DNA of 64,000 nt, taken from Thalia democratica. Taxonomy: Eukaryota. The stretch is from positions 24,490,001 to 24,554,000 of the forward strand of contig OZ241828.1 in NCBI GenBank assembly GCA_965202585.1. Reading direction: 5' to 3'. Both the position numbers and the translations under genes were made by a program. Positions 9,330 to 52,744 of this stretch are shown piece by piece (within the stretch, counting starts at the first letter, position 1; each line of letters opens with the position of its first letter). The notes beneath the pieces were generated by a model. The model worked only from the letters and a program-made list of their open reading frames with translations. It searched no databases and was not told where the DNA came from.

Positions 9330-10757
9330 CTAAAACCTAATCTTTTTACTTTTTAGGGGCTTGACATATTTCTTGAACTGGACTTTTTCTACATGCCTTT
9401 TCTTTTCATCACGGTTTTTACCTTGTTTAGTAATCGATTTATTTGGGAAGCAGCTCAATATTTCCAATCCATCAACACAAAAATCTACTTCATTTTTAGA
9501 AAATTTAGGTAAACTTCCTAAAAAATCATTAAAGTACCAACCCAGATGAAACGCTCCAGAAACACGAGATAACTTATTTGAAAATTCAAAAAAATACAAT
9601 TGAGCTTCACAGTAGTTCTTTTCTTCAAAATAAGTTAGAAAGTTTTTTACGTGTTTATACCATGTTCCCGACTTGAAACCGACATTCAACTCAATCGTTG
9701 GTGGGCTTTCAAAAAGTTTGTTGTTACTAAACAGCTCATCAAGTGATATAGAAATACATTTTTTGATACTTTTTAATAAATCAGAAAGAAATTTATACTC
9801 ATTTTGTTTAAAATTTAATGTTGTTGGCAAAAAAAAGTTTGCTTTTTTTCTATTGTTGATTCTATTTAATGATGTACCATATAGTTCATCATAAGTTAAA
9901 CTAAAAGGAAATGCTGACATAAAATTCATTTTTATCCCTTTAGATTCTCTGTTTGATAACTTAACTAAACAGTCTAAAAGATTTATAACATATAAAAACT
10001 TTTTAAAAAAACAGATTCTGTTTGAGCAACGTTCAGTTATTTTTGTTTTTTCAACAAAATATTTCTTGTTCTTAGTTGAGAACGAACGGACGCAATCATC
10101 GAAATATTTTTTAAGAATTTGGTTCACAGAGGTCATTGAGCTGAAGTGAATAGCAGTAAAGGACTTTTCAATTTCTACGTTGAGTACATCTGTGATTCCA
10201 TCACTTTTTAGTGTCTTTTAAAAAGCATGCTGGTTATTATAAGTATCTGTAATGTTTGTTGTACACCCTATCAAAATTGCAAAAGTTTTTTCTTTCCATT
10301 TAAAATTAACTTTTACTTCGTTTTTCAATGTTACATTATCTGAAGTTTTCAGCAGTTTTTGTCTATATATTTTTACTTGTATCTTCTTTTTAAACTTTTC
10401 TACCAAATACAACTTTTTCAAATGATATTTTTCTAGAAATTTTTTACTTTTGGTATTAAATGGGTATACATTTTTCTTATCTGCATATCTTTGTTTAATC
10501 AACTTTACAGATTCAATAGAAAACAAATGGACTTCAGCGTATCCTTTTGACTCAAGAAGCTCGTTTCTTTGAATTTCGACATCAATTATATTAGTGACAC
10601 CAATACTTTCAATTTTCTTCACAATTTCAAATTCACTTGAACCAGGGTCCAATCCACCAATGAAAAGCGAGTATTTGTTTCCATGGTAATCATACTTGAG
10701 AGACTTGTCCAAATAAGATTCTTCCGATTTCAAACTATCTTGAATATAAACCAGCAT
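9330..10757 (-). pseudogene. Family X copy A1 (RRM-RRM-unknown domain), one nonsense codon
   Basis: ATG at 10757 (MLVYIQDSL...). Track ORFs 10218..10757 and 9330..10136 are in one frame, separated only by TAA at 10218-10220 where copy A2 has AAA (HAF*KTLKSDG versus NAFKKTLKSDG). Confidence 0.85.
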
Positions 10758-12552
10758 ACTAGCTTCTAACTAACAACATATATACTACTATCAGAGAACA
10801 TTTAGTTACTAAAACTAACTTTTAAAATTAATGATGGCCTTAGCTTAAAATTAAAAATTTTAATGGTGTAGAAAGTATATTAGCAGACTTATTAATATTG
10901 TTAAGTATTTTTTTTCTCTATTTATTTTTAATTAAAAAATCTGCTAAGCACTACAAAATCTACAATTTTTTTTTACATAACGCAGAAGTTCAGAACAATA
11001 TAACAATGTTTACAGGTTTTATAAGTCTACCTACATGAAAAAAATAAAAATAAACGTTTTAAAAAAGAATCAATAAAAAATGCATTTAAAACTAAATAAT
11101 GTTTTATGTTTTAATTACTGCAATTTACATTGAGTCAAAACACAAAATATACATTTTTATTTTATATTTTTTCTCAACCTCACTTAAATTTGTATATGCT
11201 TTCTTATATGACATAGTGCACACAATTTGTTGAAATTATGAAAGATCACTAATTTTAAATTATAATGCCTATGCTGTTACTTACACTTTTTATTACTAAA
11301 TTCTTATTATTAATAATGTTAATTAATTTAAATAGTTATTTAATAACTAAAGTTTTGTATAAAATTTTAGACAACCATAGTAATTTAATAAATTTTACCA
11401 ATTTTAAATGTAGTATAAGTGATAAAGTAAAAACTTTTTAACATTTATATATTTAACTTAAAACAAAAGTGTTTATTTAAGTTAAATTTACTAACAGCAA
11501 ATTTAAAACATAATATAGTTAAAAATAAAAACAAAACGATTATCTAAGCCTAATATTAAAATGCACTTTTTTGCTTTTATTTCCGCTTACACATAAAATA
11601 TACGATAATTTATTAAGCAGGTTTGTTTTTATGTATTTATTTAATTCAAAAACGCAAATTTTTGTAAATCTAAATATAAAGTTTTTATTTCTTAGTAACT
11701 TAACTTAGCTTAATACACGTGTAATTTTTATCTTAAATGTATTCATTTCGATTATATCTAGTAAAGTATCATTCGGCTTAGTACAACAGCTAACCTTCTT
11801 TTGGGTTTATAGTTGAAAACGGAAGCTTCATGGTAAAAAAAATCTTTTTTAATCTAAATTTGTTCATGCTACATTTTTACTGCTCTTTGAACACGTCTTT
11901 GAACACTTAAATTTTGAGTATAAAAACTTTTATTTTAATTGCCGAGTTCGTGTTTCGTGACGAAACTATCCATAAAAGTTCATTGCTAATTTAAAAAAAA
12001 ATGATTTAAAGCTAAAATTTTGATATGAATATATCACAATTTTTACAAGTTGCATAAGTTTTGAAAACTAAGCATAACATTTTCGATGGTACTTAATAAA
12101 TCTAAATTATGCTGGTTATTGTAGATTTTGTAATTTATCAGTTTTATGATACATTGCTAGATTTATTAAGTGTTCAGCTTTCTAAAAGAGTTGAAAACTA
12201 ATAAACTTCTGAACAAAATTACTTAATTTTAAAATGTTTTTTTTTTCAACTGTTCTTTATAAACTTATCATCAAAGACTTTGTTGGACACTTATGCAAAA
12301 TTTTATTTTCCCTAAGGTGTCAAAACTTTGATAATTTAAAGAAATTTATGTTTTTCACTTAAATTTTTTTTTTTTTTTAAATAACAACAAATAAATATAT
12401 AAAATATTCCCCGAAAAAACTAGTATTCACAAACAAAATAAGTGTTAATTAATAATGATTTGTGTTTCTTTTTACTTGGTTGAACTAGATATAGCTTGTT
12501 TGTTAGCTAAAGGAATATGAAAGATCGCGCGATCTACAAAGTCCAAAGACTA

Positions 12553-12690
12553 TTAGTAAACTGTCATGTGCCTCAAATGTTTTTGCAAGCCTCTAAAAAC
12601 ACTGCGCATCCTGTATTTGATGTTAGTAAGTTCACAAGTCTCACCATCGAACACTTCAACAGTGTTTAAAACAAAACATATTTTTCTCAT
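12553..12690 (-). pseudogene. Kelch-repeat remnant K2 (internally deleted)
   Basis: Translates FVLNTVEVFDGETC...SVFRGLQ, homologous to K3 and K4 (LNSAEVFD...FVFGGLQ). Confidence 0.6.
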
Positions 12691-13836: not shown

Positions 13837-15082
13837 TTATTTTAACAATTTAAATTCAATATTTTTACTTTTCATAGGCTTATTGTTGTGCTTGCATTGT
13901 ACTTCATTTTTTTTATATTGATCAATGGTTCTTTCACCGGGAAAACAACTCAATATTTCCAAGCCACTTACACAAAACCCTTCTTCTACTTTAGAAACCC
14001 AAGGTAAATATTTTGAAAATTTATCAAAACACCTTTCAGCTTTACTATAGTTCTTTTTCTTAAAACTGATTAGAAAGTATTTAACGAGTTCGTACCTTGG
14101 TTTCGTCTTAAACCCAACGTTCAACTCGATGTTTCGTGGACTTTCGTATATCTTGTTAATACTAAACAGCTCATCAAGGGAAATTAATACCCAATTTTTA
14201 ATACTTTTTGTTAAACCAGTAAGGAATTTTTGTTCACCTTTGATAAGATATTCAAACATCTTTTAATAACTCAAGTATTTTCTTTTTAATAGTGCATCTA
14301 TCATGGCTTTAGTTTTTAAGAACTTAATGAAAAAACAATTTTTATTTATGCAGCAGTCAAATTTTATTTGGTTTTCTACAAAATATTTTTTGTTTTTACT
14401 TGAAAACGAACGGACGCAGTTATCGTTTAAATATTTTTTAAGAATAAAATCAACAGAATTCATTGAACCAAAATAGATAACAGTAAGTGACTTTCCAAAT
14501 TTTACTTTAAGTACATCTGTAATGACATCATTTTTTAGTGTCATCTTAAAAGCAAACATATTTTAACATCCTCATCTGTTGTGTTTATAATTGTCCCGAT
14601 CAAAACTGCATATTGAGTTTCTTTCCATTTAAAATTAATTTTTTCTTCAGTTTTCAACTTCAAACTATCTGTGACTTTCAGCAGTTTTTGTCTATATGTT
14701 TCAACTTGTAATTCCTTTTCAAACTTTTCTACCAAATACAACTTTTTCAAATGGTACTCTGCAAGGTATGTTTAGCTTTTTGAATTAAATGAGTACACAT
14801 TTTTTTAACGGAGTTTCTTTCTTTAGTTAAACTTACAGATTCAATTAAAAACAAATGGACTTCAGCGTATCTTTTTGACTCAAGAAGCCCGTTCATTTGA
14901 GTTTTAACATCAGTTATATCAGTGACACCAATACTTTCAATTTTCATCACAATTCCAAATTCACTCATACTAGGAAGTAATCTACCAATGAAAAGCGAGT
15001 ATTTGTTACCATGGTAATCATACTTGAGAGATTTGTCCAAATAAGATTCTTCAAACATAAAACTATCTTGATGACTACTCAT
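13837..15082 (-). pseudogene. Family X copy B1, several frameshifts
   Basis: ATG at 15082 (MSSHQDSFMFEESYLDKSLKYDYHGNKYSLFIG). The family sequence is split across four successive track ORFs (14747..15082, 14541..14750, 14263..14559, 13837..14259) and reaches GLEILSCFP. Confidence 0.88.
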
Positions 15083-26123: not shown

Positions 26124-26172
26124 GTCTATATCATAAACAGCTATTTTTATTTTTAAGAACTCATGTCGTCTA

Positions 26173-26640
26173 TCAGTGTCTTTCTTTTAAAGGTGAAAAC
26201 ACGTTAATAAAACTGCTACATACCTCAAATGCTTCTTGTAAGCCTCCGAAAACAAAAAAATATTTTTGACAGATAACAAACTTGTGGCTATTTCTAATTT
26301 GCATCATGTTTGGCATGAAAATCCACAAGTTCTCCTCATGATCAAACACCTCAGCAGAGTTTAAAACAAAACTTATACTTCCAATTACCCTTGCACAACC
26401 GCTCTGCCTTGTGAAACTGCGCTGGCTGCTTTTCTTACTGGCTGCTTGTAGTTTTTCGCACGTGTTTCGTTTTACCGTGCAAATTCCAAGCACGAGTCAA
26501 CAGATTGCTGGTATAACTACTTTCCAATCGCCAGTTGTGTAGATGTTGTCCATGAGAGCGCAACGCTGAATGAACACCGATTAAATGGAATCAGACCGAC
26601 TCTTGTCGACTTGTTAGTTGTTTGATTATACTTTGAAATT
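26173..26640 (-). pseudogene. Kelch-repeat gene remnant K3 (best preserved, about three blades)
   Basis: Frames give SKYNQTTNKSTRVGLIPFNRCSF, CALMDNIYTTG, DSCLEFAR, RKAASAVSQGRAVVQG and VLNSAEVFDHEENLWIFMPNMMQIRNSHKFVICQKYFFVFGGLQEAFEV (Kelch LNS.E.YD...N.W..MP.M...R..H......FVFGG). Frameshifts and stops are present. Confidence 0.82.
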
Positions 26641-28168: not shown

Positions 28169-29605
28169 TCAACATCTAAAACCTAATCTTTTACTTTTTA
28201 GGGGCTTGACATATTTCTTGAACTGGACTTTTTCTACATGCCTTTTCTTTTCATCACGGTTTTTACCTTGTTTGGTAATCGATTTATTTGGGAAGCAACT
28301 CAATATTTCCAAACCATCAACACAAAAATCTACTTTATTTTTAGAAAATTCAGGTAAACTTCCTATAAAATCATTAAAGTACCGACCCGGAAGAAACGCT
28401 ACAGAAACACGAGATAACTTATTTGAAAATTCAACAAAATTCCATCGCGCTTCACTATAACTCTTTTCTTCAAAATAGATTAGAAAATTTTTTACGTGTC
28501 TATACCATGTTCCCGACTTGAAATTGACATTCAACTCAATCGTTGGTGGGCTTTCAAAAAGTTTGTTGTTACTAAACAGCTCATCAAGTGATATTAAAAT
28601 CAATTTTTTGATACTATTTAATAAATCAGAAAGAAACTTATACTCAATTTTTTTAAAAGTTAATGTTATTGGCAAAAAAAAATTTGCTTTTTTTCTATTG
28701 TTAATTCTATTTAATGATTTACCATATATTTCAACATAAGTTAAACTACAAGGAAATGCTGACCTAAAATTAATTTTTTTCCTTTTAAATTCTCTGTTTG
28801 ATAACTTAACTAAGCAGTCTACAAGATTTGTAACATATAAAAACTTTTTAAAAAAACAGATTCTGTTTGAGCAACGTTCAATTGTTTTTGTTTTTTCAAC
28901 AAAATATTTCTTGTTCTTAGTTGAGAACGAACGGACGCAATCATCATCGAAATATTTTTTAAGAATTTGGTTCACAGAGGTCACTGAACTGAAGTGAATA
29001 GCAGTAAGGGACTTTTCAATTTCTACGTTGAGTACATCTGTGATTCCATCACTTTTTAGTGTCTTTTTAAAAGCATTCTGGTTATTATAAGTATCTGTAA
29101 TGTTTGTTGTACACCCTATCAAAATTGCAAAAGTTTTTTCTTTCCATTTAAAATTAACTTTTACTTCGTTTTTCAATGTTACATTATCTGAAGTTTTCAA
29201 CATTTTTTGTCTATTTATTTTTACTTGTATCTTCTTTTTAAACTTTTCTACCAAATACAACCTTTTCAAATGATATTCTTCAAGAAACTTTTTACTTTTG
29301 GTATTAAATGGGTATACATTTTTCTTATCTGCATATCTTTGTTTAATCAACTTTACAGATTCAATAGAAAACAAATGGACTTCAGCGTATCTTTTTGACA
29401 GAAGAAACTTGTTTCTTTGAATTTTGACATCAATTATATCAGTGACACCAATACTTTCAATTTTCTTCACAATTTCAAATTCACTTGAACCAGGATCCAT
29501 TCCACCAATGAAAAGTGAGTATTTGTTTCCATGGTAATCATACTTGAGAGACTTGTCCAAATAAGATTCTTCCGATTTCAAACTACCTTGAATATAAAGC
29601 AGAAT
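28169..29605 (-). CDS. Family X copy A2: full open frame (470 aa from TTG 29581), but the paralogous ATG is mutated to ATT
   Basis: Uninterrupted frame. RRM-like RNP2 SLFIGG and RNP1 KRYAEVHL, second repeat AILIG...KSLTAIHF, C-terminal ESPPTIELNV...FCVDGLEILSCFP. Codon 29605-29603 is ATT where A1 and A3 have ATG. Expression is unproven. Confidence 0.7.
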   Translation of the reverse strand: MLLYIQGSLKSEESYLDKSLKYDYHGNKYSLFIGGMDPGSSEFEIVKKIESIGVTDIIDVKIQRNKFLLSKRYAEVHLFSIESVKLIKQRYADKKNVYPFNTKSKKFLEEYHLKRLYLVEKFKKKIQVKINRQKMLKTSDNVTLKNEVKVNFKWKEKTFAILIGCTTNITDTYNNQNAFKKTLKSDGITDVLNVEIEKSLTAIHFSSVTSVNQILKKYFDDDCVRSFSTKNKKYFVEKTKTIERCSNRICFFKKFLYVTNLVDCLVKLSNREFKRKKINFRSAFPCSLTYVEIYGKSLNRINNRKKANFFLPITLTFKKIEYKFLSDLLNSIKKLILISLDELFSNNKLFESPPTIELNVNFKSGTWYRHVKNFLIYFEEKSYSEARWNFVEFSNKLSRVSVAFLPGRYFNDFIGSLPEFSKNKVDFCVDGLEILSCFPNKSITKQGKNRDEKKRHVEKVQFKKYVKPLKSKRLGFRC

Positions 29606-35482: not shown

Positions 35483-36720
35483 TCATGGGCTTAACATATT
35501 TCCTGTATACTTTTTCTGCATGGCCTTATTTTCATGTTGATAAATGACCTGTTTATCTTGGAAACAACTCAATATTTCCAAACCAGTAGCAAAAAACTTT
35601 TTAACCTTTAGAAAACCTTTAGAAACCCGAGATAATTCACTTGAAAATTGATCAAAATATCTTTCAGCTAGACCATAGTTCTTTTCTTTAAAATAGATTA
35701 AAAAGTTTTTTACATGTTTGTACCATGTTTTCGACTTAAACCTGACATTCAACTCAATCATTGATGGATTCTCATAAAGCTTGTTATTACAAAACTTTTC
35801 TTTGAGCGCCATTGATATCCATTTTTTAATACTTTTTAGTAAATCAGTAAGGAAGTTTTTTTCACCTTTGAAATGATATTTACTCATTTCGAAATTTGTT
35901 ATTACCATACTCAATTGTTTTATTTTTAATGGTGCATCTACCATAGCTCTAGTGTTTAAGAACTTGAGGAAAAAACAGTTTTTGTTTATGCAACAGTTTA
36001 AATTTATTGGGTTTTCAATAAAATATTTTTTATTCTTTTCTGAAAACGAGCGGACACAATTGTCGTCTAAATAGTTTTTGAGAACAATTTCAACAGAATT
36101 TATTGAACCAAAATAAATAACAGTAAATGTCTTTTCAAATTTTAAGTTGAGTACATCTGTAATGCCATCATTTTCTAGTATAATTTTAAATGTTAATCTA
36201 TTTTTAGTATCATCTGTAGTGTTTCTTGCGGTCCTGATCAAAACTGCAAATTGGGTTTCTTTCCATTTAAAACTTATTTTATCTTCGGTTTTTAACTTTA
36301 AATTATCTGTGACTTTCTGCAGTTTTTGTCTATAAGTTTCAGCTTGTAATTCCTTTTCAAACTTTTCTACCATATACAACTTTTTCAAATGGCACTCTTC
36401 AAGATATGTTTTGCTTTTTGAATTAAATGAGTACACATTTTTTTTATCGGAATATCTTTGTTTAATTAAGCATACAGATTCAATTGAAAACAAATGGACT
36501 TCAGCGTATCTTTTTGACTTAAGAAGCTTGTTTCTTTCAATTTTGACATCAATTATATCAGTGACACCAATACTTTCAATTTCCTTACAATTTCAACTTC
36601 ACTCGTACCAGGGTCCAATCCACCAATGAAAAGCGAGTATTTGTTTCCATGGTAATCATACTTGAGAGATTTGTATAAATAAGATTCATCAAACATAAAA
36701 CTATCTTGATGACTACTCAT
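35483..36720 (-). pseudogene. Family X copy B2, single 1-nt deletion
   Basis: ATG at 36720, in frame to GGLDPGTSEVEIV. GTAAGGAAATTG at about 36580 lacks one A relative to paralogs; thereafter the family frame is open to the stop at 35483 (track ORF 336 aa). The lesion is in an A-run and could be an assembly error. Confidence 0.8.
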
Positions 36721-37406: not shown

Positions 37407-37484
37407 GTTTCCATGGTAATCATACTTGAGACATTTGTCCAAATAAGATTCTTCCAATTCAAAATTATATTGAAAGTTATTCAT
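37407..37484 (-). pseudogene. Family X 5' fragment (divergent subtype D)
   Basis: ctAG|c ATG AAT AAC TTT... translates MNNFQYNFELEESYLDKCLKYDYHGN, then fuses abruptly to the B2 upstream flank at about 37406. Confidence 0.85.
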
Positions 37485-38899
37485 GCTAGAAAGACTTATA
37501 TGTTTTTTTTTGACTAAGTATAACAAATAGTAGCATTAATTAACATTTTTAACTAATGATGGCCTTAGTTAAAAGTTAAAAGGTGTATAAAATTTATAAG
37601 CAGGCTTTTTTTTGTTTGAAGAACTTTAAATTAACAGTTCAATATAAGTATTTTACTCAAAATAAAATATCTGCTAAGCACTAGAATTATTTATAATGGT
37701 CCTATATACAATACAGATAGTTTAAACAATAACAAGATTTATTTATTTAAAACTAATTTTATCAATTTTATTATTTAAAGTTCTAAAGTTTTCTGATTTA
37801 ATAAATTAATTATGCTGTTTTTTTTTTCTTAACCTCACTTAACTTTGTAATTTTTTTAACATTCTAGATACAGTAATTTTTTAGCACACAACTTATCAAA
37901 ATAAACATCACTAAGCTTTAAAAAATTACCTAAGCTAATCCTAATACTTAACAGCTTCAAACTAATTTCTTTTCTAGTATCTTCATACCTACAATTTAAA
38001 CTGTTACTAAAAACCAAAGGTTAAGTACAACTTAAAACAACTATTATATCAACATTTATATTTTATAGATCATATACTGTTGCTGATCTAATATTTTTTG
38101 TTTTTTTATGCTGAATTAAAGTATAAACTTTTATTCAATTTAATTTTACCAACTTTTGCTTAAAGACTCAACAAAATAACTTAATCAAAAAAAAAAAAAA
38201 CAATTTTGAAATATTATTTAATCGTAAACATCAAGTAATAACTAGGATAAAAAATAAGGTATTTTAAACGTTAAGGCTAGCTTAAAATGGCAAACCTTAG
38301 TTAAACGAAGTATAAAATCAATTACTATTATTACCTAAACTATCTTGTTAATGTTAATTTTATAAACGTGCTTTTTATCTTAGGAGAATTTATTTCAAAG
38401 ATAATTTTGTTAATTTATTTAGTATATATAAGAACAAATACTAGGCCTAGTAAAAGTTTATTGAACTTTAAACAACAGCTCTTTATTTTTATTCTGAATG
38501 AAAAACGGCAGGTTGACGAACACAATAATAATTATTTAGCTTCTGACTTTGTTAGTTTTAGATTTTTTTATCCGACCTACCTCAAATAGCTCGTTGATTT
38601 AGCAAAGAAAGTTTTTTTTCATTATTTAAAAACTTTTTAATGATAAAACTGTTCATAAAAGTTCATTTGTAACCGGGTTTGTTTCATGTTCAAATATTAG
38701 TATAAACATACTTTTAACTAGCTCAAAGTTTTAAAATAAACATAATATTTTTGATGGTAACTTGATTTGTTAGAGATTTGTTCTCGATCTTTGGTTTGTT
38801 CTAGATTTGATAGTTCATCTATATAGTTAATTAATAGTTTTTAACAAGGTTAATATTTGAATATTTTGATAATTAAACATTATTTGACATTAGAATAAT

Positions 38900-39590
38900 T
38901 TCTTTCAAACTATATAAATGAGACTCAATTTTTAGAACAAGATATATTTCATGCTTCTTTCATCAGTTGAATACTAGGCAATAAAAATAAAGTTTGAAAT
39001 TTAACTTATATAGTGGAAATGCAATCAACGTAATTAATAATAATAAAGCAAAGAGTAATTAACAATACAATACATAATACAGTAATTATTGACGAATTTT
39101 GTAAGAGTAATGAGAAAACTAAATCTATTAGAGTAATAAATGCTTCAAAAAGATCTGCTATTTCTGAACACTTAGATAATAACCTTGATTGTGCTAGTAA
39201 TTATAATTTAAAAAGATTTAAAATTGTTAAAAAATGTTTTCACATTTCGGATTTAATTAAACTTGAGGCTATTTGTATTTTATTAAGAAAACCTAAGTTA
39301 TGTAAACATAAAGATTTTGATTATACTGTTTCGTTGTTTTCTTAAATTGTTTTATAAGTTGTTGCTTTGCTCTGTTTTATTATTATTTTTTTAGTTGCAT
39401 TGTAATTATAAGTACTTATGTATTGTTAATTACTCTTTGCTTTATTATTATTAATTACGTTGATTGCATTTCCACTATATAAGTTAAATTTCAAACTTTA
39501 TTTTTATTGCTTAGTATTCAACTGATGAAAGAAGCATGAAATATATCTTGTTCTAAAAATTGAGTCTCATTTATATAGTTTGAGAGAATA
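38900..39590. mobile_element. Penelope-like retroelement remnant: GIY-YIG C-terminus between inverted repeats of about 175 bp
   Basis: 38900-39077 is the reverse complement of 39416-39590 and they flank the endonuclease tail. Inverted pseudo-LTR arrangements are characteristic of Penelope-like elements. Confidence 0.78.
39091..39345 (+). pseudogene. Penelope-type GIY-YIG endonuclease C-terminal fragment
   Basis: Reads DEFCKSNEKTKSIRVINASKRSAISEHLDNNLDCASNYNLKRFKIVKKCFHISDLIKLEAICILLRKPKLCKHKDFDYTVSLFS-stop, matching the Penelope ending SAI.EHL..N..CA..Y...RF.I......L..LEA..I....P.LC.QK.F...L.LF. Confidence 0.82.
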
Positions 39591-39649
39591 TTTTGATATT
39601 CAGTTTTTTAAATTAAGTTTTAACTTACGATGTACCTAGTATCAGGACT

Positions 39650-39810
39650 CAATTTTTTCTGATTTTTTTTCAGGGTTCATTTCCGAAGTCTTAGGTTAAC
39701 CAAAGGCATCCACAAGGCAGTGGAGTTGAAAAATCTATGTGCTCATAGCAGGACTAGAACCTTGAACCCCGTGAACTGGACTGTACCCGCTACCACTGCA
39801 CTATCAGGTC
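39650..39810 (-). mobile_element. tRNA-derived SINE (head plus partial body)
   Basis: Minus strand starts GACCTGATAGTGCAGTGGTAGC (A-box TAGTGCAGTGG) ... GGTTCTAGTCCTGC (B-box-like) and continues into unrelated body sequence; no complete cloverleaf. Confidence 0.6.
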
Positions 39811-40079
39811 ACTTATCTATATATAGATATATATAAAATAAATAAATAAATATATACATATATATAAATTCAACAAAAAACAAATTTAGCAGGAAAATTA
39901 AAGTCGGTCACGTATACATTATATGTATTTTTGTACATTATATGACTACATTACTTTCTTATTTCAAAGCTAATATTAAAACTTTTACATCATTTAAAAA
40001 TCTCAATTCCTTAGCTTTAAATTCAAGTTATTTAAACATAGTTTAGACTTAGTTTTTACTTTTGTTTTGTTTTTTTTTT

Positions 40080-40127
40080 TCTAGGTAGTGCAACAGCTAG
40101 AGCATTCCACCCCACGCGACGCCCCTG
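40080..40127 (-). mobile_element. Solo hAT-like terminus (CAGGGGCGTCGCGTGGGG on the minus strand)
   Basis: Ends ...CCCCACGCGACGCCCCTG at 40127 and directly abuts a truncated family X coding fragment. Same family as the terminus at 53144; no partner end or TSD found. Confidence 0.55.
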
Positions 40128-40290
40128 GTTCGTACCATATTTTCGACTTGAATCCGATATTCAACTCAATCTTTGATGGGCTCTGATGTAGCTTTTTATT
40201 GTTATATAGTTCGCCAAGCGATATCAATATCCATTTTTTTATGCATTTTAATAAACTAGTAAGGAATTTATGTTCATTTTTTTAAGATAA
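40128..40290 (-). pseudogene. Family X internal fragment truncated at a hAT terminus
   Basis: Translates KNEHKFLTSLLKCIKKWILISLGELYNNKKLHQSPSKIELNIGFKSKIWYE. Confidence 0.85.
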
Positions 40291-41396
40291 CTTAATTTTG
40301 GAACTTTAATAAAAAAATGCAAATACTTGTAAAACGAAATATAAAATTCTTTATATTTATTTATCTAGCTTAAAAGTAGGTATTTTAAAGAAAAGATTAA
40401 GAGTGTTGTGTAAGTACAAATACTAAACTAAACAAATACTATTAGATTTTGAGTAAAAGCTTTGATTATGTAGTGAAAAAGTCATGTTTATGTTGGAAGT
40501 ACGATCTTAAATTATGGATCAGTTAAAACAGAATATTTGTTAAGCTGGCTTCTAAAACTTGCTAGTTATTTTACTCTTGGTGATACCATAGTTTTTCTTG
40601 ATATTATTTTTAGAGTAAGTTAAGCATATAATTTACTAACGACAAGCGACAAGTATAAATTGACTACTTTAAATTATGTGTTTTTAGTTTAACACTGTAT
40701 TTTTTATATTATCTGAAAAGATAGTTTAACCTTAATTTATTTAAATGCTATTTGATTAAAAAACTGCTATTTTAAGTATGAAAGCATATTCAAAACTGTG
40801 AAACATGTCATATTCATACAACTAACTATTCTGTTTAAAGTTCTGAGTAGCTAATGTAATTTTAAGCTTTACACAAATAAAAAACCATTTCTTTGTGCAA
40901 ACATGTTGGTCAATTAGCAACTTAACTTTTGGTAAACTTTACTAAAAACGTTTAAGCAACCAAAAAATTTATACACTACTTAAATTTTTAGAACACATCA
41001 AAATTGTTTTTGAGAAAGATTTAGTTTCCAAGTTGTTAAATATGAACAATAAAGTACTTGTTTTGGTAAATAGCATAATTTTATTTAAAAAAATTAATAT
41101 TATTAAAAAAAATATTATAACACATACTTTTATTTATATACTGTATGACAAACTTAATCCTATTTGCATGTTCATTCTATAAAGTCTTTACTTAATTTGT
41201 TTATAAATTCATTTTAGATTAAATGAAAAATGCATTACTATAAATCTTCAAAAAAAGTGCTAAATTTTAAAATCAAAATATAAATAAGTAAATTATACCG
41301 ATTTCAATTAACATCTTTTAACTATACTTTTACTTCGGAAATTTTAAAAATACATTTTATGACATTAATGATATATAAAGTTGTACAAATCAAAAC

Positions 41397-41532
41397 TTAT
41401 CTTAACGTTTTAAACTTAACCCTTTTACTTTTCAAAGGCTTGAAATATTTCTTGTACTGTTCTTTGTTTACATGGCGTTTCTTTATACCAAACTTTTTAC
41501 GTTGGGTAATGAACGGTTTATTTAGGAAACAT
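41397..41532 (-). pseudogene. Family X C-terminal fragment
   Basis: Translates CFLNKPFITQRKKFGIKKRHVNKEQYKKYFKPLKSKRVKFKTLR-stop. Confidence 0.8.
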
Positions 41533-41799
41533 TCATTGTATGAAATTTTTGTATTATTAAATTATAAATACCTCTTGATTGACATAAAGAAAAAAAACAT
41601 CACTACCATTTATAAAAAAGAAATATAAAAAATTAAAAATTAAAAAATATATGAGTGAATTATACCAAATAAAATAAATAATTTTTACCGTCAAGTTTAC
41701 ACTACAAAGTTAAAATCAGATTCTATAACATAATACTAAAGCACAATTTTAGATTTATAAAGTTGATCAAGTCCATATATGCATAAAGTTGTACAAATC

Positions 41800-42065
41800 A
41801 AAACTGATCTCAACACTTTAACCTTAACCCTTTTACTTTTCAAGGGCTTGACATATTTCTTGTATTGTAGTTTTTTTACATGCTATTTCTTTTTACCACA
41901 CTTTTTACGTTGGGTAGTGATCGGTTTATTCGGGAAACAAATAAATATTTCCAATCCATCAACACAAAAATCTTCATCATTTTTAGAAAATTCAGGAGAA
42001 CTTCCTAAAAAATTATCAAAATACCTACCAGCACAAACAACTGCTTCAGAAACCCAAGGTTTCAA
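41800..42065 (-). pseudogene. Family X C-terminal fragment
   Basis: Translates PWVSEAVVCAGRYFDNFLGSSPEFSKNDEDFCVDGLEIFICFPNKPITTQRKKCGKKK*HVKKLQYKKYVKPLKSKRV. Confidence 0.85.
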
Positions 42066-42540: not shown

Positions 42541-43982
42541 CTATCTCAACTTTTTATACTTAAAATTTTTACTTTTCATAGGCTTGTCATTTTTCTTATA
42601 CTTTACTTTTTCTAAATGGCATTTCTTTTTACCACACTTTTTACGTTGGGTAGTGATCGGTTTATTTGGGAAGCAACTCAATATTTCCAATCCATCAACA
42701 CAAAAATCTACTTCATTTTTAGAAAATTCAGGTAAACTTTCTAAAAAATCATTAAAGTACCAACCTAGATGAAACGCTCCAGAAAACGAGATAACTTATT
42801 TGAAAATTCAAAAAAATACAATTGAGCTTCACTGTAGTTCTTTTCTTCAAAAGAGATTAGAAAGTTTTTTACGTATTCATACCATGTTTCCGATTTAAAA
42901 CCGACATTCAACTCAATCGCTTGTGGATTTTAAAAAAGCTTGTTATTACTAAACAGCTCATCAAGTGATATTGAAATCCATTTTTTGATACTTTTTAATA
43001 AATCAGAAAGAAATTTATACTCAATTTGTTTAAAAGTTAATGCTGTTGGCGAAAAAAAGTTTGCTTTTTTTCTATCGTTAATTTCATCTAATGATGTACC
43101 ATATAGTTCACGAAAACTTAAACTAAAAGGAAATTTTGACAAAAAATTCAATTTTTTCCTTCTAGATTCTCTGTTTAATAACTTCACTAAGCAGTCTACA
43201 AGATTTATAATATATAAAAACTTTCTAAAAAAACAGATTCTGTTTGAGCAACGTTCAATTATTTTTGTTTTTTCAACAAAATATTTCTTATTCTTAGTTG
43301 AAAACGAACGGACGCAATTATCATCGAAATACTTTTTAAGAATTTGGTTCACAGAGGTCACTGAGCTGAAGTGAATAGCAGTAAAGGACTTTTCAATGTC
43401 TACGTTGAGTACATCTGTGATTCCATCACTTTTTAGTGTCTTTTTAAAAACGTTCTGGTTATCATTGTTATCTCTAATGTTTGTTGTACACCCGATTAAA
43501 ATTGCAAAAGTTTTTTCTTTCCATTTAAAATTAACTTTTACTTCGTTTTTCAATGTTACATTATCTTAAGTTTTCAGCAGTTTTTGTCTATATATTTTTA
43601 CTTGTATCTTCTTTTTAAACTTTTCTACCAAATACAACTGTTTCAAATGATACTCTTCTAGAAATTTTTTACTTTTGGTATTAAATGGGTATACATTTTT
43701 CTTATCAACATATCTTTGTTTAATCAACTTTACAGATTCAATAGAAAACAAATGGACTTCAGCGTAATTTTTTGACAGAAGAAACTTGTTTCTTTGAATT
43801 TTGACATCAATTATATCAGTGACACCAATACTTTCAATTTTCTTCACAATTTCAAATTAACTTGAACCAGGGTCCAATCCACCAATGAAAAGCGAGTATT
43901 TGTTTCCATGGTAATCATACTTGAGAGATTTCTCCAAATAAGATTCTTCCGATTTCAAACTACCTTGAATATAAAGCAGCAT
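42541..43982 (-). pseudogene. Family X copy A3, several nonsense codons and a frameshift
   Basis: ATG at 43982 (MLLYIQGSL...). Stops at GSS*FEI (about 43857), LLKT*DN (43566) and KLF*NP (42930), plus a 2-nt deletion near 42785. Confidence 0.88.
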
Positions 43983-47001: not shown

Positions 47002-48241
47002 TCATGGGCTTAACATATTTCCTGTATACTTTTTCTGCATGGCCTTATTTTCATGTTGATAAATGACCTGTTTATCTTGGAAACAACTCAATATTTCCAA
47101 ACCAGTAGCAAAAAACTTTTTAACCTTTAGAAAACCTTTAGAAACCCGAGATAATTCACTTGAAAATTGATCAAAATATCTTTCAGCTAGACCATAGTTC
47201 TTTTCTTTAAAATAGATTAAAAAGTTTTTTACGTGTTCGTACCATGTTTTCGACTTAAACCCGACATTTAACTCAATCATTGATGGACTCTCATAAAGCT
47301 TGTTATTACAAAACTTTTCGCTGAGCGATATTGATATCCATTTTTTAATACTTTTTAGTAAATCAGTAAGAAAGTTTTTTTCACCTTTGAAATGATATTT
47401 ACTCATTTCGAAATTTTTTGTTACCATGTTCATCTGTTTTCTTTTTTAATGATTCATCTACCATAGCTCTAGTGTTTAAGTACTTAAGGAAAAAACAGTT
47501 TTTGGTTATGCGACAGTTTAAATTTATTGGGTTTTCAATAAAATATTTTTTATTCTTTTCTGAAAACGAGCAGACACAATTGTCGTCTAAATATTTTTTG
47601 AGAACAATTTCAACAGAATTTATTGAACCAAAATAAATAACAGTAAATGTCTTTTCAAATTTTAGGTTGAGTACATCTGTAATGCCATCATTTTCTAGTA
47701 TAATTTTAAATGCTGATCTATTTTTAGTATCATCTGTAGCTTTTCTTGTGGTCCTGATCAAAACTGCGAATTGAGTTTCTTTCCATTTAAAATAAACTTT
47801 TTCTTCGGTTTTCAACTTCAAACTATCTGTGACTTTCAGCAGTTTTTGTCTATATGTTTCAACTTGTAATTCCTTTTTAAGCTTTTCTACCAAATACAAC
47901 TTTTTAAAATGAAGTTCTTCAAGAAACTTTTTGCTTTGTGAATTAAATGAGTACACATTTTTCTTATCGGAATATCTTTGTTTAACTAAGCTTACAGATT
48001 CAATTGAAAACAAATGGACTTCAGCGTATCTTTTTGACTTAAGAAGCTCATTTCTTTGAATTTTGACATCAATTATATCAGTGACACCAATACTTTCTAT
48101 TTTCTTTACAATTTCAAATTCACTCATACTAGGAAGTAATCCACCAATGAAAAGCGAGTATTTGTTACCATGGTAATCATACTTGAGAGATTTGTCCAAA
48201 TAAGATTCTTCAAACATAAAACTATCTTGATGACTACTCAT
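47002..48241 (-). pseudogene. Family X copy B3, single +1 frameshift
   Basis: ATG at 48241, 280-aa frame; the family sequence continues in track ORF 47002..47433. One extra base in a T-run at about 47443-47448 relative to B2; could be an assembly error. Confidence 0.8.
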
Positions 48242-50408
48242 GCTAGAAAGCCTGCTAATTTTTTTTTACTAAATCAATAAACTTATCAAAACCTTGACTT
48301 TTATCAATCCTAAGTGTTTTTATTGGTTTAATATTTTAAAGGTAAAAAAAAAACATATCTTCTAACACAAAAGTTAAATTTAAAGTAAAAATCTAAATGT
48401 GTAGAAAATATACAATAAGTAGACTTATCTGTTTAAAAGAAGTACTTTAAACTATTTTTTTTTATTCAAGCATTTTAAATAAAACAAAAACCATTAAAAA
48501 AACATTTTTTTTCAAAGGCTTACGAATACAAATAAACTTCAAAACCTCTATACATTTTTAAAGCACTATAAACTATATTGAGTCAATATCTTATTGTACA
48601 GTACTTGTTTTTTTATTTATTTAGGCTCACTTAAACTTGTGTTTGATTTGAAGTGTCTCAGAATTATAAAACGTATTAGCACATGATGTAAAAAATATAA
48701 AGCTAACAGATCACTACAAAAACAATACCTTAGCTGATACTAAATATACTCAACAAAATAAATTTTCTGATATCTACATACTTTTAATTTAACTTCTTAC
48801 TCGAAAACCAATCTATCTAAAAAAATATATCTGTTAAAATGGTGTTAAAATATATCTACATGAAAAAACTGATAAGAATTTATTTTTTAGCTTATCATTA
48901 AAATGTAAATTTTAAAACGTGTATTTTTAAGCACTTTAAACTGTATTAAGTTAACAAAAAAATTATAAAATAGTTTATTGGTTTTACTATTTTAGTTTTT
49001 ATTTTCTTATTTTCATTTAAGTCTGTATTAGATTTTTAATATAACATAGTGCACATAATTTTTTGGAATAAAATGAAAGATCACTAAAATTTAAACTTTA
49101 ATACCTTAGCTGATACTAGACATTTTTTTACTAAAGTCTTTTCTAATATCTACATATTTAAATTAAACTTTTACTTAAAATAAAAGTTTTCATTCTAGAC
49201 AACCATTTAGCAACATCTACCAATTTTAGATGTTATAATCTACAGTTACAATTTAAAGTAATTAATCTAAAAAAACTCAAGTCTTAATATGTTTAGCTGA
49301 AAATAAAACTGTTAATTTAATTTTAACAACATTATTCTTTAACACAAAACTTAGTAAAAACAAAAACAAAACATTTTTTAATGTTATCTAACCTGTAAAC
49401 ATTGTAATAAAATCTAAGTTAAAAACCTTGTTATATAGTTCTTTTTATTTTGTAGAGTTTTAATTTAAAAACGCAATTGTTTGTGAAATGAACTATAGAG
49501 TTTTTAATGTTTTTTTAGAATAATATTTAATTATTTCTTATAAAAGTAATATAAATATTATGAATATTTTCTAAGTTTAAATTCTAAGACGAGCTTAATA
49601 TTATTTAATTTAAATAAAAGCTCTTAATTTTTGATTTTGTGGTGAACAATGGCAAATTTATGTTAAAAGTTCAATCATAAATTAGTAATATTTCACATCG
49701 TTAATGTTAGGTTTTTTATTTAGTTTGCCTCAATTATTCTCATGATTTATCAAAACATGTTTTATTTTTAGGAAATTCTTCAGTGACAAAACGTTTATTG
49801 AAACTCCATCAGTAACTGAGTGTAATGTTTATTTTAAGTTTAAATACTATATGAAGGTTCAAAAGCTTTACTTGTTTAAAGTTTGAAAAATTTAGAATAG
49901 CATTTTAACTGGACAAGTTTATCAGTTTTACTTCACCAAATTAATTTTAGATTTAAATTATTAGATCTTTTAGAATACGATATCACAGCTAATGAAAATT
50001 GTATGTTTATACTTGATATATAAATTTGTGTTTTTACGTTTTATTTTTTAAATTTAAAGATAGGCTAAAATAAATTTCAGCTTCACAATTATAGATAATC
50101 TAATTTATTTAAGTTTAATTGATTCATCTGTGAATAAAAAAACTCTCACAATTTAATGTTAAAATTCTCCTTTACCATTTCCTCATGGTTTTCACAACTT
50201 ATTAAAACATATTTTAATAATTTTTAAACTCTTTAATTAAACCTAGCTTAGAACTATCGACTAAAACAAAGAAAGTGCACAAGTTTATAGACTAACAACG
50301 AGAAAAATAATTTAAAGTAAAAGCTGTCATATTGGTAAAACTTCACTTTCATTCGACTAAATGCCAGAATTTACGATGAACGAAGTTTTATTTACGGTAA
50401 CGCGGACC

Positions 50409-50480
50409 ATGATAAGTGTGCAGAAAATGATAAGTTTGCAGAAAATGATAAGTGTGCAGAAAATGATAAGTGTGCAGAAA
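50409..50480. repeat. 18-bp tandem repeat x4 (ATGATAAGTGTGCAGAAA) inside the block-3 copy of the unassigned segment (about 50320-50800)
   Basis: Four units are read directly; the block-1 paralog has one unit (atgaaaagtgtgcagaaa, about 17304-17321). Confidence 0.9.
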
Positions 50481-50942
50481 ATCAACACTTTCCACCTAAG
50501 GTGTCCCTGCCTTATTCATAGAACTTGATTCTTAGATCTTACAAAAGGTCACCAACTAGCAAGTGTTGAAATAGAATTCCTTAACCAATTTGAACATGTT
50601 ATAAGAATTGGCGACAAGTGAAGGATATGAACCCAAAAGGTATGTTGTACACCTAGTTGGTCTAAAACAAAGTTTTAACACATCTTCTGAGCGCTAATTA
50701 TCTTGAATATAATCAAGTATGATTGAGGGGAGTTTGCTAATGACGCGACAAATATCAAAGTTATACCTACAAAAGGATGATAGAGAGAAAAATTAAATAC
50801 TAAATAAAAATTAAGTTGATGAATAAACCAAAGTTTCAAATAGATTTCATTTTTATTATTTCATACTTTCTTGCATCATTGTGGCTGTCTGATTATAGTA
50901 TTTTTTGAGCACATCTTGACATTTTTATCCAATTGCCAAACA

Positions 50943-51334
50943 TTAAAGTTCAATTATTGAGTCTGGAGGCAACTCAATGCTCGGCTCCAACTCAATAATA
51001 TCAGGTTTAATTTTTTTTCATTCTGCATTTTACTTGTACTTTTTTATTTAGTTTCGAAGTCCAAGCAATCGTTTTTCCACATTCGGGACATTTACTAATT
51101 ATTTCATCGAAACAGTGCGAATGAAAATAGTGTCCACGGCTGGTCATTAACGGGCATTTTTGTTCGTTTTTTTTTCAAATCTTCAATACTTTGATTTTCT
51201 TCTTTTTGTTTACATTTAACGCAGAAATCGTAAGTTCTGTTTTTGAAGGTGTAGCAAATATATGTTTGTTTTTACTTTTTACAGTAACACATCTTATTTT
51301 GCTGATAGAGTTCCAAAAAAAACTTATAATCCAT
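50943..51334 (-). pseudogene. RBX1/APC11-like RING-H2 gene remnant R2
   Basis: ATG at 51334, TAA at 50943-50945. Across frameshifts reads ICY...YDFCVKC...KCPLMTSRGHYFHSHCFDEIISKCPECGKTIAW...PDIIELEPSIELPPDSIIEL; FHSHC mirrors RBX1 FHFHC. Confidence 0.72.
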
Positions 51335-51862
51335 GATTTTGATGTTTATTAATAAACAAAAGTATTAATACTTTTTTTTATTGAACGAATACATAAAAAA
51401 TATTCGAACATTTATAAAAATCGACATAGAAATAAAATATTTTACAAAAAAAAACATAAATATAGTTCTGTTTGTTTTTGATTTGGACAAACAGTTTGCT
51501 TCCACGTATTACTACCATGGAAATAGAAATAAAATTATCAGTTAATTTATATAAAATTAAATGTTATAATATTAATTTTGATCTACATTGTAATACGCCT
51601 TGAAAAACTTTTAAGGTTGAAATATCATTAACTAATGATATTCGAAAAATGCTTAAAACATCTTTTAAAAACTAATTTTCATCAGTTTTCTATTTTTTAT
51701 ATTATTTACCTTTAATTTAGTTTTAACAAAGATATTTTTACCATTTAAAGTCAACAGTTTTCTTTAGATTTTCAGTACTTTTCAAACATGTATTAATTAT
51801 ACCAAGGTTTGTGAAGTTGATCGGTTTATTTGTGAAGTTTTTGTACATGCTATTTATTTTTA

Positions 51863-52744
51863 TCAAAAGTTTTTTGTAATGTTAGAGATCGGTTTGTCTT
51901 GGATAATGACCTCTTCATCAGGAAAACAACTCAGTATTTCCAAACCATGATGACAAAAATTTACTTCGCTTTTACAAACTTCAGGTAAACTGCGTAAAAA
52001 TCGATCAAAATACTTTATTGCCAGACTGTAGTATTTTTCTATAAAATAAATTAAAAAGTTTATTAAGTTTTCGTACCATAAATTCGACTTATATCCAACA
52101 TTAAACTCAATAATGGTGGCCTATCAATAAGTTTAAATTTACTAAACAGTTCGTCAAGCAATACTGATATCCATTTTTTAATACTTTTTGATAAATCAGT
52201 AAGGAATTTACTTTCATTATGCTCAAGATAAAACATGCTTAATTTCGTTTTTTTATAATTCAAAAATTTACTTTAAAAAAATTGTATTTCTTGAACCATA
52301 TCTTAGGGGATTTGACCAAGCCTTAAAATAAAACTCTTTAAGCGGTTTTTTTTTATAAGGTTCAACTTGTATTCCTATTTCAAACTTTTTTATCAAATAC
52401 TACTTTTTCAAATCAAATTCTTCAATAATTGCTTTGCTTTTTGCATTAAATGGGTATACATTTTTCTTACCTGGATATCTTTGTTTAATTAACTTTACAG
52501 ATTCAATTGAAAACAAGTGGACTTCAGCGTATCTTTTTGTCTCAAGATGCTTGTTTCTTTGAATTTTGACATCAATTACATCAGTAATACCAATATTTTC
52601 AATTTGCTTCACAATTTCAATTTCACTCGTACCAGGTTTCAATCCACCAATTAAAAGCGAGTGTTTATTTCCATGGTAATCATACTTGAGAGATTTGTCC
52701 AAATGATAATCCTCAAATACAAAACTGCTTTGACAATTACTCAT
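51863..52744 (-). pseudogene. Family X copy C1: divergent subtype with one RRM, disrupted
   Basis: ATG at 52744, 114-aa RRM1 ORF ending in an early stop. The second RRM-like repeat is absent; C-terminal pieces KFLTDLSKSIKKWISVLLDELF and NFCHHGLEILSCFPDEEV...KNF-stop (51863) are present. Confidence 0.85.

What the first reader, a model, noticed from the sequence alone, without database searches (positions are those of the whole stretch)
9330..52744. Tandem birth-and-death array of an unrecognised intronless RRM-RRM gene family (family X)
Seen: 7 near-complete copies (A1, B1, A2, B2, A3, B3, C1) and at least 4 fragments in 43 kb, all on the minus strand, in at least four diverged subtypes. They keep invariant motifs (LDKSLKYDYHGNK, (K)RYAEVHLF.IESV, IELNV.F, GLEILSCF) despite substantial amino-acid divergence, which implies past coding selection. 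Established: LFIGGL and KRYAEVHL fit RNP2 and RNP1 of an RRM. I recognise no named family with this architecture. Inference: a lineage-specific, fast-turnover RNA-binding family, a pattern typical of germline, host-defence or genetic-conflict genes. This is the best candidate for an undescribed system here.
Basis: partly seen in the sequence, partly recalled or inferred. Interest (0 to 1): 0.85.

Follow-up and report, generated by a model that had tools for sequence, protein, structure and literature searches.

The report
Decaying tandem array of CPSF6-type RRM genes
A 43-kb run of seven same-strand copies of a lineage-restricted single-exon gene, built from two copies of the RNA-recognition domain of the polyadenylation factor CPSF6/7 plus an unknown helical domain, is real, but every copy here is damaged, so the locus is mostly a gene graveyard and not a proven working system.

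Summary
Seven near-complete copies and four fragments lie on the minus strand between 9.3 and 52.8 kb, and the quoted motifs are present.

The family is not wholly unrecognisable:
- The N-terminal domain is a CFIm68/59 (CPSF6/CPSF7)-type RRM. A PDB profile search gives E about 1e-6, against 5e-3 for generic RRMs. Foldseek gives TM 0.74. It is 38% identical to a genuine CPSF6.
- The second domain is an internal duplicate of the first (hhalign 93.7%, E 2e-7).
- The C-terminal domain of about 130 aa has no match by sequence or fold.

The family is very narrow: 17 hits among 1.84 billion representative proteins, and only one intact full-length relative.

All seven copies carry lesions. The only unbroken ORF (A2, 470 codons) has ATT where its sisters have ATG. 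Terminal branches evolve near-neutrally. Deep branches give dN/dS about 0.45 (CI 0.33-0.64), which indicates past constraint.

The RRM1 module shows three further features:
- It is conserved even at synonymous sites.
- Its read depth is roughly 5-15 times that of the rest of the gene.
- It is also fused to a cullin on a related contig.

No RNA data could be found. I found no transposon or viral signature.

Verdict: a new lineage-specific variant of RRM proteins, evolving by birth and death, mostly dead at this locus. Function is inferred only. Other first-reader notes in this genome report RRM-cullin and RRM-Ulp1 fusions elsewhere; I did not test those.

The parts
9333..10757 (-). Copy A1. The ATG is present. 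A single in-frame TAA at codon 172 (10218-20) splits it into ORFs of 179 and 268 aa, and there is one 3-nt deletion.
13840..15082 (-). Copy B1, a deep B branch. It has several frameshifts and a stop. The RRM1 ORF of 111 aa keeps its ATG.
28169..29605 (-). Copy A2, the only unbroken ORF (470 codons; stop-free for 482). The position of the A-type ATG reads ATT (29605-29603). A 1-nt deletion at 28188 changes the last 6 residues.
35483..36720 (-). Copy B2. A 1-nt deletion at codon 38, not in a homopolymer, cuts RRM1. The remaining 336-aa ORF is open.
42544..43982 (-). Copy A3. It has three in-frame TAA codons (34, 131, 343) and a 1-nt deletion at codon 392.
47002..48241 (-). Copy B3. One frameshift near codon 258 splits it into ORFs of 280 and 143 aa. 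The ATG is present.
51866..52744 (-). Copy C1. It has RRM1 (a 114-aa ORF with ATG) and the C-terminal domain, but lacks RRM2 and the middle region. It also carries frame changes and stops.
37407..42029 (-). Zone of fragments: 37407-37454 (residues 4-19), 40129-40275 (313-361), 41409-41534 (428-469) and 41826-42029 (399-466), plus partial repeats of the unit flanks.
29333..29545 (-). RRM1 core of A2 (codons about 15-83). It is conserved at third codon positions across 12 copies, including a cullin fusion. Summed read depth here is 5-15 times that of the rest of the gene.
28919..29173 (-). RRM2 of A2 (residues about 137-221), an internal duplicate of the CPSF6-type RRM.
28169..28639 (-). Orphan C-terminal domain of A2, predicted helical, followed by a Lys-rich tail.
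26176..26496 (-). Kelch-motif relic carried about 1.7 kb downstream of the gene within the duplicated unit. Sister relics lie at 7389-7706 and 33757-33973.

Best explanation
Shown:
- This is a tandem array made by repeated DNA-level segmental duplication, with later patchwork recombination or gene conversion.
- The unit is 4-6 kb and holds one single-exon gene plus a Kelch relic.
- The gene family is lineage-restricted.
- Its product has a CFIm68/59 (CPSF6/7)-type RRM, including that family's N-terminal Y-x-Y-x-G-x-K extension and its C-terminal extension. A long helix follows, then a second, partly degenerate copy of the same RRM, a variable spacer, an orphan helical domain of about 130 aa and a Lys-rich tail.
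- It lacks the Pro-rich and RS-like domains of true CPSF6/7.
- All seven copies at this locus are damaged. Four of them carry only one or two lesions, so they died recently.
- Recent branches evolve near-neutrally. Older branches show moderate purifying selection.
- The RRM1 module is more conserved than the rest of the gene, even at synonymous sites. It has many more copies in the genome and is also joined to a cullin on a related contig. It therefore behaves as a shared, homogenised module.

Inferred (about 30% likely):
- Intact members, such as the 420-aa relative P0001, are nuclear adaptor proteins.
- Their CFIm-type RRMs dock on the NUDT21/CFIm25 dimer, or on RNA beside it.
- Without the RS-like activation domain, they would act as alternative or competing large subunits, and the orphan domain would bring in an unknown partner.
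For: Array and copies:
- unit homology covers the flanks, e.g. 7396-11832 versus 26183-30661 at 90% and 34001-37406 versus 45553-48917 at 91%.

CFIm-type RRM1:
- PDB phmmer and profile searches put CPSF7 3n9u (1.1e-6) and CPSF6 3q2s (2.4e-6) first, against hnRNP A1 at 5e-3.
- The profile search of 1.84e9 proteins recovers a genuine CPSF6 (P0016) and a CPSF6-like protein (P0014) as the only non-family hits.
- BLASTP gives 38% identity over 76 aa, E 9e-14.
- Foldseek gives TM 0.74, 0.65 and 0.64 to the CFIm68 and CFIm59 RRMs, and tandem-RRM proteins align over about 200 columns.

RRM2 as a duplicate:
- hhalign gives 93.7%, E 1.9e-7, over 81 columns.
- AF2 shows two beta-alpha-beta-beta-alpha-beta modules at 21-91 and 151-210.

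Orphan C-terminal domain.

No Pro-rich or RS domain.

Lesions.

Selection:
- Terminal S:N counts are near the neutral fraction.
- ancA-ancB omega is 0.45, CI 0.33-0.64; RRM1 omega is 0.23-0.29.
- Coding and flank divergence are similar and mosaic in the young duplicates.

Module behaviour:
- Third-position conservation.
- About 5-fold shorter branches and a conflicting topology in the RRM1 tree.
- Depth of 1000-2600 against 150-500.
- RRM1 fused to a cullin on L002.
- Two RRM1-only ORFs in tandem on L004.
Against: - There is no expression evidence: runs X1-X4 cover the flanks as well as the genes, so they are DNA.
- The CFIm25-docking idea rests only on homology of the RRM. The interface residues could not be checked because the structure paper is not held.
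- Pfam RRM_1 is below its threshold (13.5 against 20.7 bits).
- The AF2 models are of low confidence overall (mean pLDDT 43 and 45).
- dN/dS is from Nei-Gojobori counts in a very AT-rich gene and on majority-rule ancestors, so it is approximate.
- The depth ratio is not a copy number.
- Reads showing ATG at 29603 and the extra T at 28188 match the A1 and A3 states at 16 of 19 diagnostic sites. It therefore stays open whether A2 is intact in other individuals.
Confidence: 0.75

Rival explanations
1. The locus is still a working, fast-turnover RNA-binding gene family. At least A2 would make a full-length protein, through a non-AUG start or an ATG allele present in the population. The truncated RRM1-only ORFs of A1, B1, B3 and C1 may be made as well. 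Turnover would be driven by germline or defence conflict.
For: - A2 has 482 stop-free codons. About 2.3 new stops are expected from its 47 lineage-specific substitutions, and none is seen (P about 0.1).
- DNA contigs of three runs show C at 29603 (= ATG) and the extra T at 28188.
- Four of the seven copies keep an ATG-initiated RRM1 ORF.
- Coding parts have far fewer indels than flanks.
- An intact relative, P0001, exists.
Against: - Those read variants match the paralogues A1 and A3 at 16 of 19 sites, so the locus cannot be assigned.
- The synonymous fraction on the A2 branch (14 of 47) is close to the neutral value.
- No RNA run holds the gene.
- The positions of the lesions show no sparing of any domain.
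Confidence: 0.2
2. The copies are cargo or ORFs of a mobile element or an integrated large DNA virus. The array would then reflect element amplification and not host gene duplication.
For: - Other first-reader notes in this genome describe amplified cassettes with RRM-Ulp1, H2B and cullin relics (unchecked).
- An embedding search of residues 125-420 puts two Nucleocytoviricota hypothetical clusters first, at 0.85 and 0.84.
- RRM1 is multi-copy.
Against: - No transposase, reverse transcriptase, integrase or capsid ORF is in the window.
- No terminal inverted or long terminal repeats flank the units, and all homology is array-internal and collinear.
- GC is flat at about 25% across the array and its neighbours.
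- The IMG/VR scan found no relative.
- The atlas scores are below the level at which shuffled proteins are excluded.
Confidence: 0.04
3. The strong synonymous-site conservation of the RRM1 core reflects a function of the nucleotide sequence itself, such as a structured RNA, a small-RNA source or target, or a regulatory element. Gene conversion or recent spread would not be the cause.
For: - Third positions of codons 15-83 are 10-12 of 12 identical, including GC-ending codons in a 25% GC genome.
- dS in RRM1 is 0.2-0.3, against 0.5-0.85 elsewhere.
Against: - There is no excess RNA folding: z is +0.76 and -0.47 against dinucleotide shuffles.
- There is no Rfam hit.
- The tree topology inside the A and B groups differs between RRM1 and the rest of the gene, as conversion or recombination predicts, and the divergence profiles are mosaic.
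Confidence: 0.06

Closest known systems
CFIm large subunits CPSF6 (CFIm68) and CPSF7 (CFIm59)
   Same: RRM1 is their kind of RRM:
- They are the best PDB sequence and fold matches.
- It shares the Y-x-Y-x-G-x-K lead-in, the GV(T/N)D(I/L)(I/L)-(D/E)-(V/I)-K strand, the SK-x-(F/Y)-A-x-V RNP1 that lacks the fifth-position aromatic, and the P-x-N-x-x-x-L extension.
   Different: - There is no Pro-rich middle and no RS/RD/RE tail: 2% Pro and 4-6 such dipeptides, against 14% and 45 in a true CPSF6.
- It has a second copy of the RRM, an orphan helical domain and a Lys-rich tail.
- It is single-exon, multi-copy, tandem and decaying. It is not an orthologue.
Tandem-RRM RNA-binding proteins (hnRNP A1 UP1, PABP RRM1-2, HuR, Pub1)
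   Same: Two RRM folds in a row. Foldseek aligns about 200 columns to them.
   Different: - The two RRMs are separated by a predicted helix of about 35 residues, not a short linker.
- RRM2 has lost the RNP2 aromatic.
- Sequence similarity to these proteins is only generic (E about 5e-3).
Lineage-specific birth-and-death tandem families (a general evolutionary pattern, as in many immune, reproductive and chemosensory gene clusters)
   Same: - Same-strand tandem copies.
- A mixture of young and old duplicates.
- Many pseudogenes.
- Gene-conversion mosaics.
   Different: No sign of positive selection was found: all pairwise and branch omega values are below 1. No expression or functional class is known.
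RRM1-cullin fusion on metagenome contig L002 (and the RRM-cullin note s1-301216 elsewhere in this genome)
   Same: It carries the same RRM1 module, at 82-87% nucleotide identity over about 200 nt and 61% amino-acid identity.
   Different: Downstream there is a complete cullin with a neddylation domain in place of RRM2 plus the orphan domain.

Membership tests
RRM superfamily (Pfam RRM_1 / RRM clan) | Beta-alpha-beta-beta-alpha-beta fold | tested here: met
   AF2 gives strands and helices in that order at 21-91 (pLDDT 60-78) and 151-210 (57-68). Foldseek matches RRM structures.
RRM superfamily (Pfam RRM_1 / RRM clan) | RNP2 and RNP1 motifs | tested here: met
   RRM1 has LFIGGL and KRYAEVHL. RRM2 has only a partial RNP1 (KSF/KTF...F), and its RNP2 lacks the aromatic.
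RRM superfamily (Pfam RRM_1 / RRM clan) | Score above Pfam's gathering threshold | tested here: not met
   The best score is 13.5 bits (E 0.067) against a cut-off of 20.7. A2 and P0001 give no hit at all. Membership rests on the profile and fold evidence instead.
CFIm large subunit (CPSF6/CPSF7) | CFIm-type RRM with its N- and C-terminal extensions | tested here: met
   The profile search also retrieves genuine CPSF6 proteins.
CFIm large subunit (CPSF6/CPSF7) | Central proline-rich region | tested here: not met
   2.1% Pro, and at most 3 Pro in any 50 aa.
CFIm large subunit (CPSF6/CPSF7) | C-terminal RS/RD/RE-like domain | tested here: not met
   4-6 such dipeptides, against 45 in P0016. The tail is Lys-rich instead.
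CFIm large subunit (CPSF6/CPSF7) | Binds the CFIm25/NUDT21 dimer through the RRM | not testable with these tools
   The interface residues were not available, and there was no complex prediction tool.
Transposon or viral ORF | Terminal repeats, transposase, RT or capsid genes, or hits in viral collections | tested here: not met

The most novel reading that the evidence does not exclude
The CPSF6-type RRM1 would be a lineage-specific, homogenised 'address tag'. It would have been placed at the N-terminus of several unrelated effector bodies: a cullin (seen here on L002), Ulp1/SENP proteases (other readers' notes, untested) and the RRM2-plus-orphan-domain body of this array. Together these would form a fast-evolving system that directs ubiquitin and SUMO enzymes and adaptors to the CFIm / 3'-end processing machinery or its RNAs. 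That could serve germline or antiviral conflict.
Probability: 0.1. Interest if true: 0.75.

Novelty: new variant of a known kind. Interest (0 to 1): 0.38.

Why it matters
The RRM of CPSF6/7 is normally a single-copy, deeply conserved docking domain of the cleavage factor Im complex. In this lineage it has been duplicated inside a gene, amplified in tandem, kept uniform at the nucleotide level and joined to at least one unrelated protein, a cullin.

If intact members are expressed, they would be natural candidates for competitors or alternative large subunits of CFIm. That makes them a way into lineage-specific control of poly(A) site choice.

As it stands, this locus mainly documents how such a family is born, homogenised and lost. 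It shows no working system.

Tried and rejected
- Pfam on four copies, on P0001 and on the C-terminal alignment gave nothing above threshold except weak RRM_1.
- The PDB sequence search with the C-terminal profile gave nothing.
- hhalign of the C-terminal domain against RRM1 found no relation. It is therefore not a third RRM by this test.
- AF2 of the C-terminal domain alone gave pLDDT 45, and the AFDB cluster search gave only noise.
- Atlas embedding searches gave only sub-threshold RRM leads.
- Scans of JGI metagenome contigs (twice) and of IMG/VR found no relatives.
- The word-indexed protein search, run on the whole protein and on region 1-120, found only P0001 and P0002.
- Rfam found nothing in the window.
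- RNA folding of the RRM1 core showed no excess structure.
- The two run searches listed no run shown to be RNA. The laid runs behave as DNA and cannot assign variants to A2 as against A1 or A3.
- Literature searches for an expanded CPSF6-like family found nothing relevant.
- The CFIm25-CFIm68 structure paper is not held.
- I considered retroposition and rejected it, because the duplicates include 1-3 kb of flank on both sides.
- I considered assembly error as the cause of the frameshifts. The B2 and A3 deletions are not in homopolymers, and A1 and A3 carry substitution stops.
Full report
**Setting**

The window is uniformly AT-rich, at about 22-32% GC, and contains no N. It carries spliced exons of a concentrative nucleoside transporter at its left end. 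DNA runs of two coded organisms and of one marine metagenome hold the sequence. The source is therefore an AT-rich, apparently marine eukaryote. I did not try to identify it further.

**Observation**

tblastn with the one unbroken ORF (A2, window 28169-29581, minus strand, 470 aa) finds seven near-complete copies and four fragments, all on the minus strand:

| Copy | Coordinates |
|---|---|
| A1 | 9333-10733 |
| B1 | 13849-15052 |
| A2 | 28172-29581 |
| B2 | 35504-36690 |
| A3 | 42553-43958 |
| B3 | 46997-48211 |
| C1 | 51893-52714 |
| fragments | 37407-37454, 40129-40275, 41409-41534, 41826-42029 |

- A 482-codon stop-free stretch has P about 3e-20 at this composition.

**How the array was built**

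- Self-comparison of the DNA shows that the duplicates include 1-3 kb of flank on each side. Examples are 7396-11832 versus 26183-30661 at 90%, 9212-12328 versus 42437-45545 at 92%, 34001-37406 versus 45553-48917 at 91%, and 12693-18637 versus 45865-51785 at 82%.
- A and B units are themselves homologous in their flanks at 65-72%.
- These are therefore DNA-level segmental duplications of a 4-6 kb unit, not retrocopies.
- I found no terminal repeats around units and no transposase, RT or capsid ORF in the window.
- Each of the A1, A2 and B2 units carries a Kelch-motif relic 1.5-1.9 kb downstream of the gene.
- Divergence along young duplicate pairs is mosaic, running from 0.7% to 24% in adjacent 300-nt bins for A1/A3.
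- Tree topology inside the A and B groups differs between the 5' part and the rest. A2+A3 versus A1+A2, and B1+B3 versus B2+B3, each have good support.
- Unequal crossing-over or gene conversion has therefore reshuffled the copies.

**What the protein is**

*RRM1*
- Pfam gives only a sub-threshold RRM_1 hit.
- The first 115 residues match the RRMs of CPSF6 and CPSF7 best among all solved structures. phmmer gives E 0.0055 and 0.016. A ten-sequence profile gives 2.4e-6 and 1.1e-6, against 5e-3 for hnRNP A1.
- The alignments run from the Y-x-Y-x-G-x-K lead-in to the P-x-N-x-x-F-L extension after the domain.
- A profile search of 1.84 billion representative proteins returned 17 hits. Fifteen are family members or fragments. 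The other two are a genuine 513-aa CPSF6, with a Pro-rich middle and an RS-like tail, and a CPSF6-like fragment.
- BLASTP of the intact relative against that CPSF6 gives 38% identity over 76 residues.

*RRM2*
- AF2 on the shallow family alignment is poor overall (mean pLDDT 43). It still gives two beta-alpha-beta-beta-alpha-beta modules, at 21-91 and 151-210, joined by a helix of about 35 residues.
- Foldseek aligns tandem-RRM proteins over about 200 columns. The CFIm68 and CFIm59 RRMs are the best single-domain matches, with TM 0.74, 0.65 and 0.64.
- hhalign of the RRM1 profile against the second module gives 93.7% probability and E 1.9e-7 over 81 columns, lead-in and extension included.
- RRM2 is therefore an internal duplicate. 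It has lost the RNP2 aromatic.

*C-terminal domain*
- The C-terminal 130-150 residues have no Pfam, PDB or hhalign relation.
- They fold only to a low-confidence helical model with no fold match.
- The tail is Lys-rich.

*Relation to CPSF6/7*
- The Pro-rich and RS-like parts that define CPSF6/7 are absent.
- The family is thus a derivative of the CFIm large-subunit RRM and not an orthologue.

**State of the copies**

| Copy | Lesions |
|---|---|
| A1 | one TAA at codon 172 |
| A2 | no stop, but ATT where A1 and A3 have their ATG (29605-29603); a 1-nt deletion at 28188 alters the last six residues |
| A3 | three TAA codons and a frameshift |
| B1 | several frameshifts |
| B2 | one 1-nt deletion at codon 38 |
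| B3 | one frameshift near codon 258 |
| C1 | lacks RRM2 and has stops |

The B2 and A3 deletions are not in homopolymers.

Contigs of three DNA runs show C at 29603 (which would restore ATG) and an extra T at 28188. However, 16 of 19 diagnostic variants in those contigs equal the A1 or A3 state. I cannot say whether they come from an intact A2 allele or from the paralogues.

**Selection**

- By parsimony, synonymous: non-synonymous changes on the terminal branches are 5:21 (A1), 14:33 (A2), 22:61 (A3), 49:122 (B1), 11:25 (B2) and 8:20 (B3). The neutral synonymous fraction is 0.19-0.27. These branches are near neutral.
- In the young duplicates, coding and flank divergence are alike, although indels are rarer in coding sequence.
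- Between the majority states of the A and B groups, dN/dS is 0.45 (bootstrap CI 0.33-0.64). Against the intact relative it is 0.48-0.56. For RRM1 alone it is 0.23-0.29.
- The family was therefore under moderate constraint in the past and is now decaying at this locus.

**The RRM1 module**

- dS in RRM1 is 0.2-0.3, against 0.5-0.85 in the rest of the gene.
- Third positions of codons 15-83 are identical in 10-12 of 12 sequences. That set includes a cullin fusion and copies from other contigs.
- RRM1 branches are about five times shorter than those of the rest of the gene.
- Summed contig depth over 29299-29592 is 1000-2600, against 150-500 for the rest of the gene. Exact single-copy pieces lie at about 42.
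- On ENA contig L002 the same module precedes a complete cullin with a neddylation domain. The cullin is split by a short gap or frameshift.
- On contig L004 two RRM1-only ORFs lie 2.9 kb apart.
- Most family hits in the protein library are RRM1-only ORFs.
- The core shows no excess RNA structure and no Rfam hit.
- I read this as homogenisation or recent spread of a shared module. I do not read it as a function of the nucleotide sequence.
- Other first-reader notes in this genome report RRM-cullin and RRM-Ulp1 fusions and amplified cassettes. I tested only the cullin case, and only on a related contig.

**Range**

- The family is nearly absent from public protein sets.
- It is absent from JGI metagenome contigs and from IMG/VR.
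- Only one intact full-length relative is known: P0001, 420 aa, 54% identical to A2, on a 2.5-kb ENA contig.

**Mechanism**

- In human CFIm, the CPSF6/7 RRM clamps the NUDT21 dimer, and the RS-like domain activates 3' processing. This rests on the titles of the PDB entries matched and on established knowledge.
- A protein with two such RRMs and no RS-like domain would most simply act as an alternative or competing partner of NUDT21, or of RNA beside it. The orphan domain would supply another contact.
- I give this about 30%. Nothing here tests it.
- No RNA data were available.

**Verdict**

- The array is real and belongs to a lineage-specific family.
- It is recognisably derived from the CFIm RRM.
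- It evolves by birth and death with gene conversion.
- At this locus it is largely dead.
- I rate it a new variant of a known kind, of moderate interest.

Noticed in passing
window 30622-31200 (a 41-nt piece also at 45016-45056): An extremely high-copy repeat, inserted next to the A2 unit. Its left part carries reiterated GCGGCCCGCG-like motifs. Summed contig depth reaches about 8e5 in runs X1-X3 and 1.5e4 in a marine metagenome, against about 40-500 nearby. It is probably a SINE- or MITE-like element.
   Followed up: partly
window 38900-39588: A foldback element: 170-nt inverted arms (38900-39069 and 39419-39588) that are 98.8% complementary. The 103-codon open frame at 39034-39342 starts in the left arm and runs into the space between them. 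It has no Pfam hit.
   Followed up: no
window 7389-7706, 26176-26496, 33757-33973 (minus strand): Kelch-motif relics (Kelch_1, E 7.7e-6) carried along in the duplicated units, 1.5-1.9 kb downstream of A1, A2 and B2.
   Followed up: partly
window 59655-60090 and 63421-63784: Two minisatellite arrays of the same short unit, in opposite orientation and about 3.3 kb apart, 82-89% alike. They give long artificial ORFs in all frames.
   Followed up: no
window 20881-21432: A short tandem repeat with a unit of about 78 nt, giving overlapping ORFs of 110-133 aa on both strands. GC is locally raised to 30%.
   Followed up: no
L004:445-933 and 3381-3734: On a 4.1-kb ENA metagenome contig, two RRM1-only ORFs of this family lie 2.9 kb apart on the same strand. 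Nothing recognisable of the rest of the gene lies downstream.
   Followed up: partly
window 52745-52760, 48242-48260 and the homologous sites; L001:790-806: In the B, C and P0001-type copies, the ATG is directly preceded by a conserved TTTCTAG, which looks like a splice or trans-splice acceptor. Similarity between the unrelated contigs L002-L004 and the window copies starts within about 7-16 nt of the ATG; L001 also aligns further upstream. A-type copies have a 9-nt deletion that removed this ATG and use one 12 nt upstream.
   Followed up: no
window 54809-55759 (minus strand): Two open frames that may be exons of a secreted protein. The upstream one starts with a signal-peptide-like segment. 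There is no Pfam hit, and GC is locally 31%.
   Followed up: no
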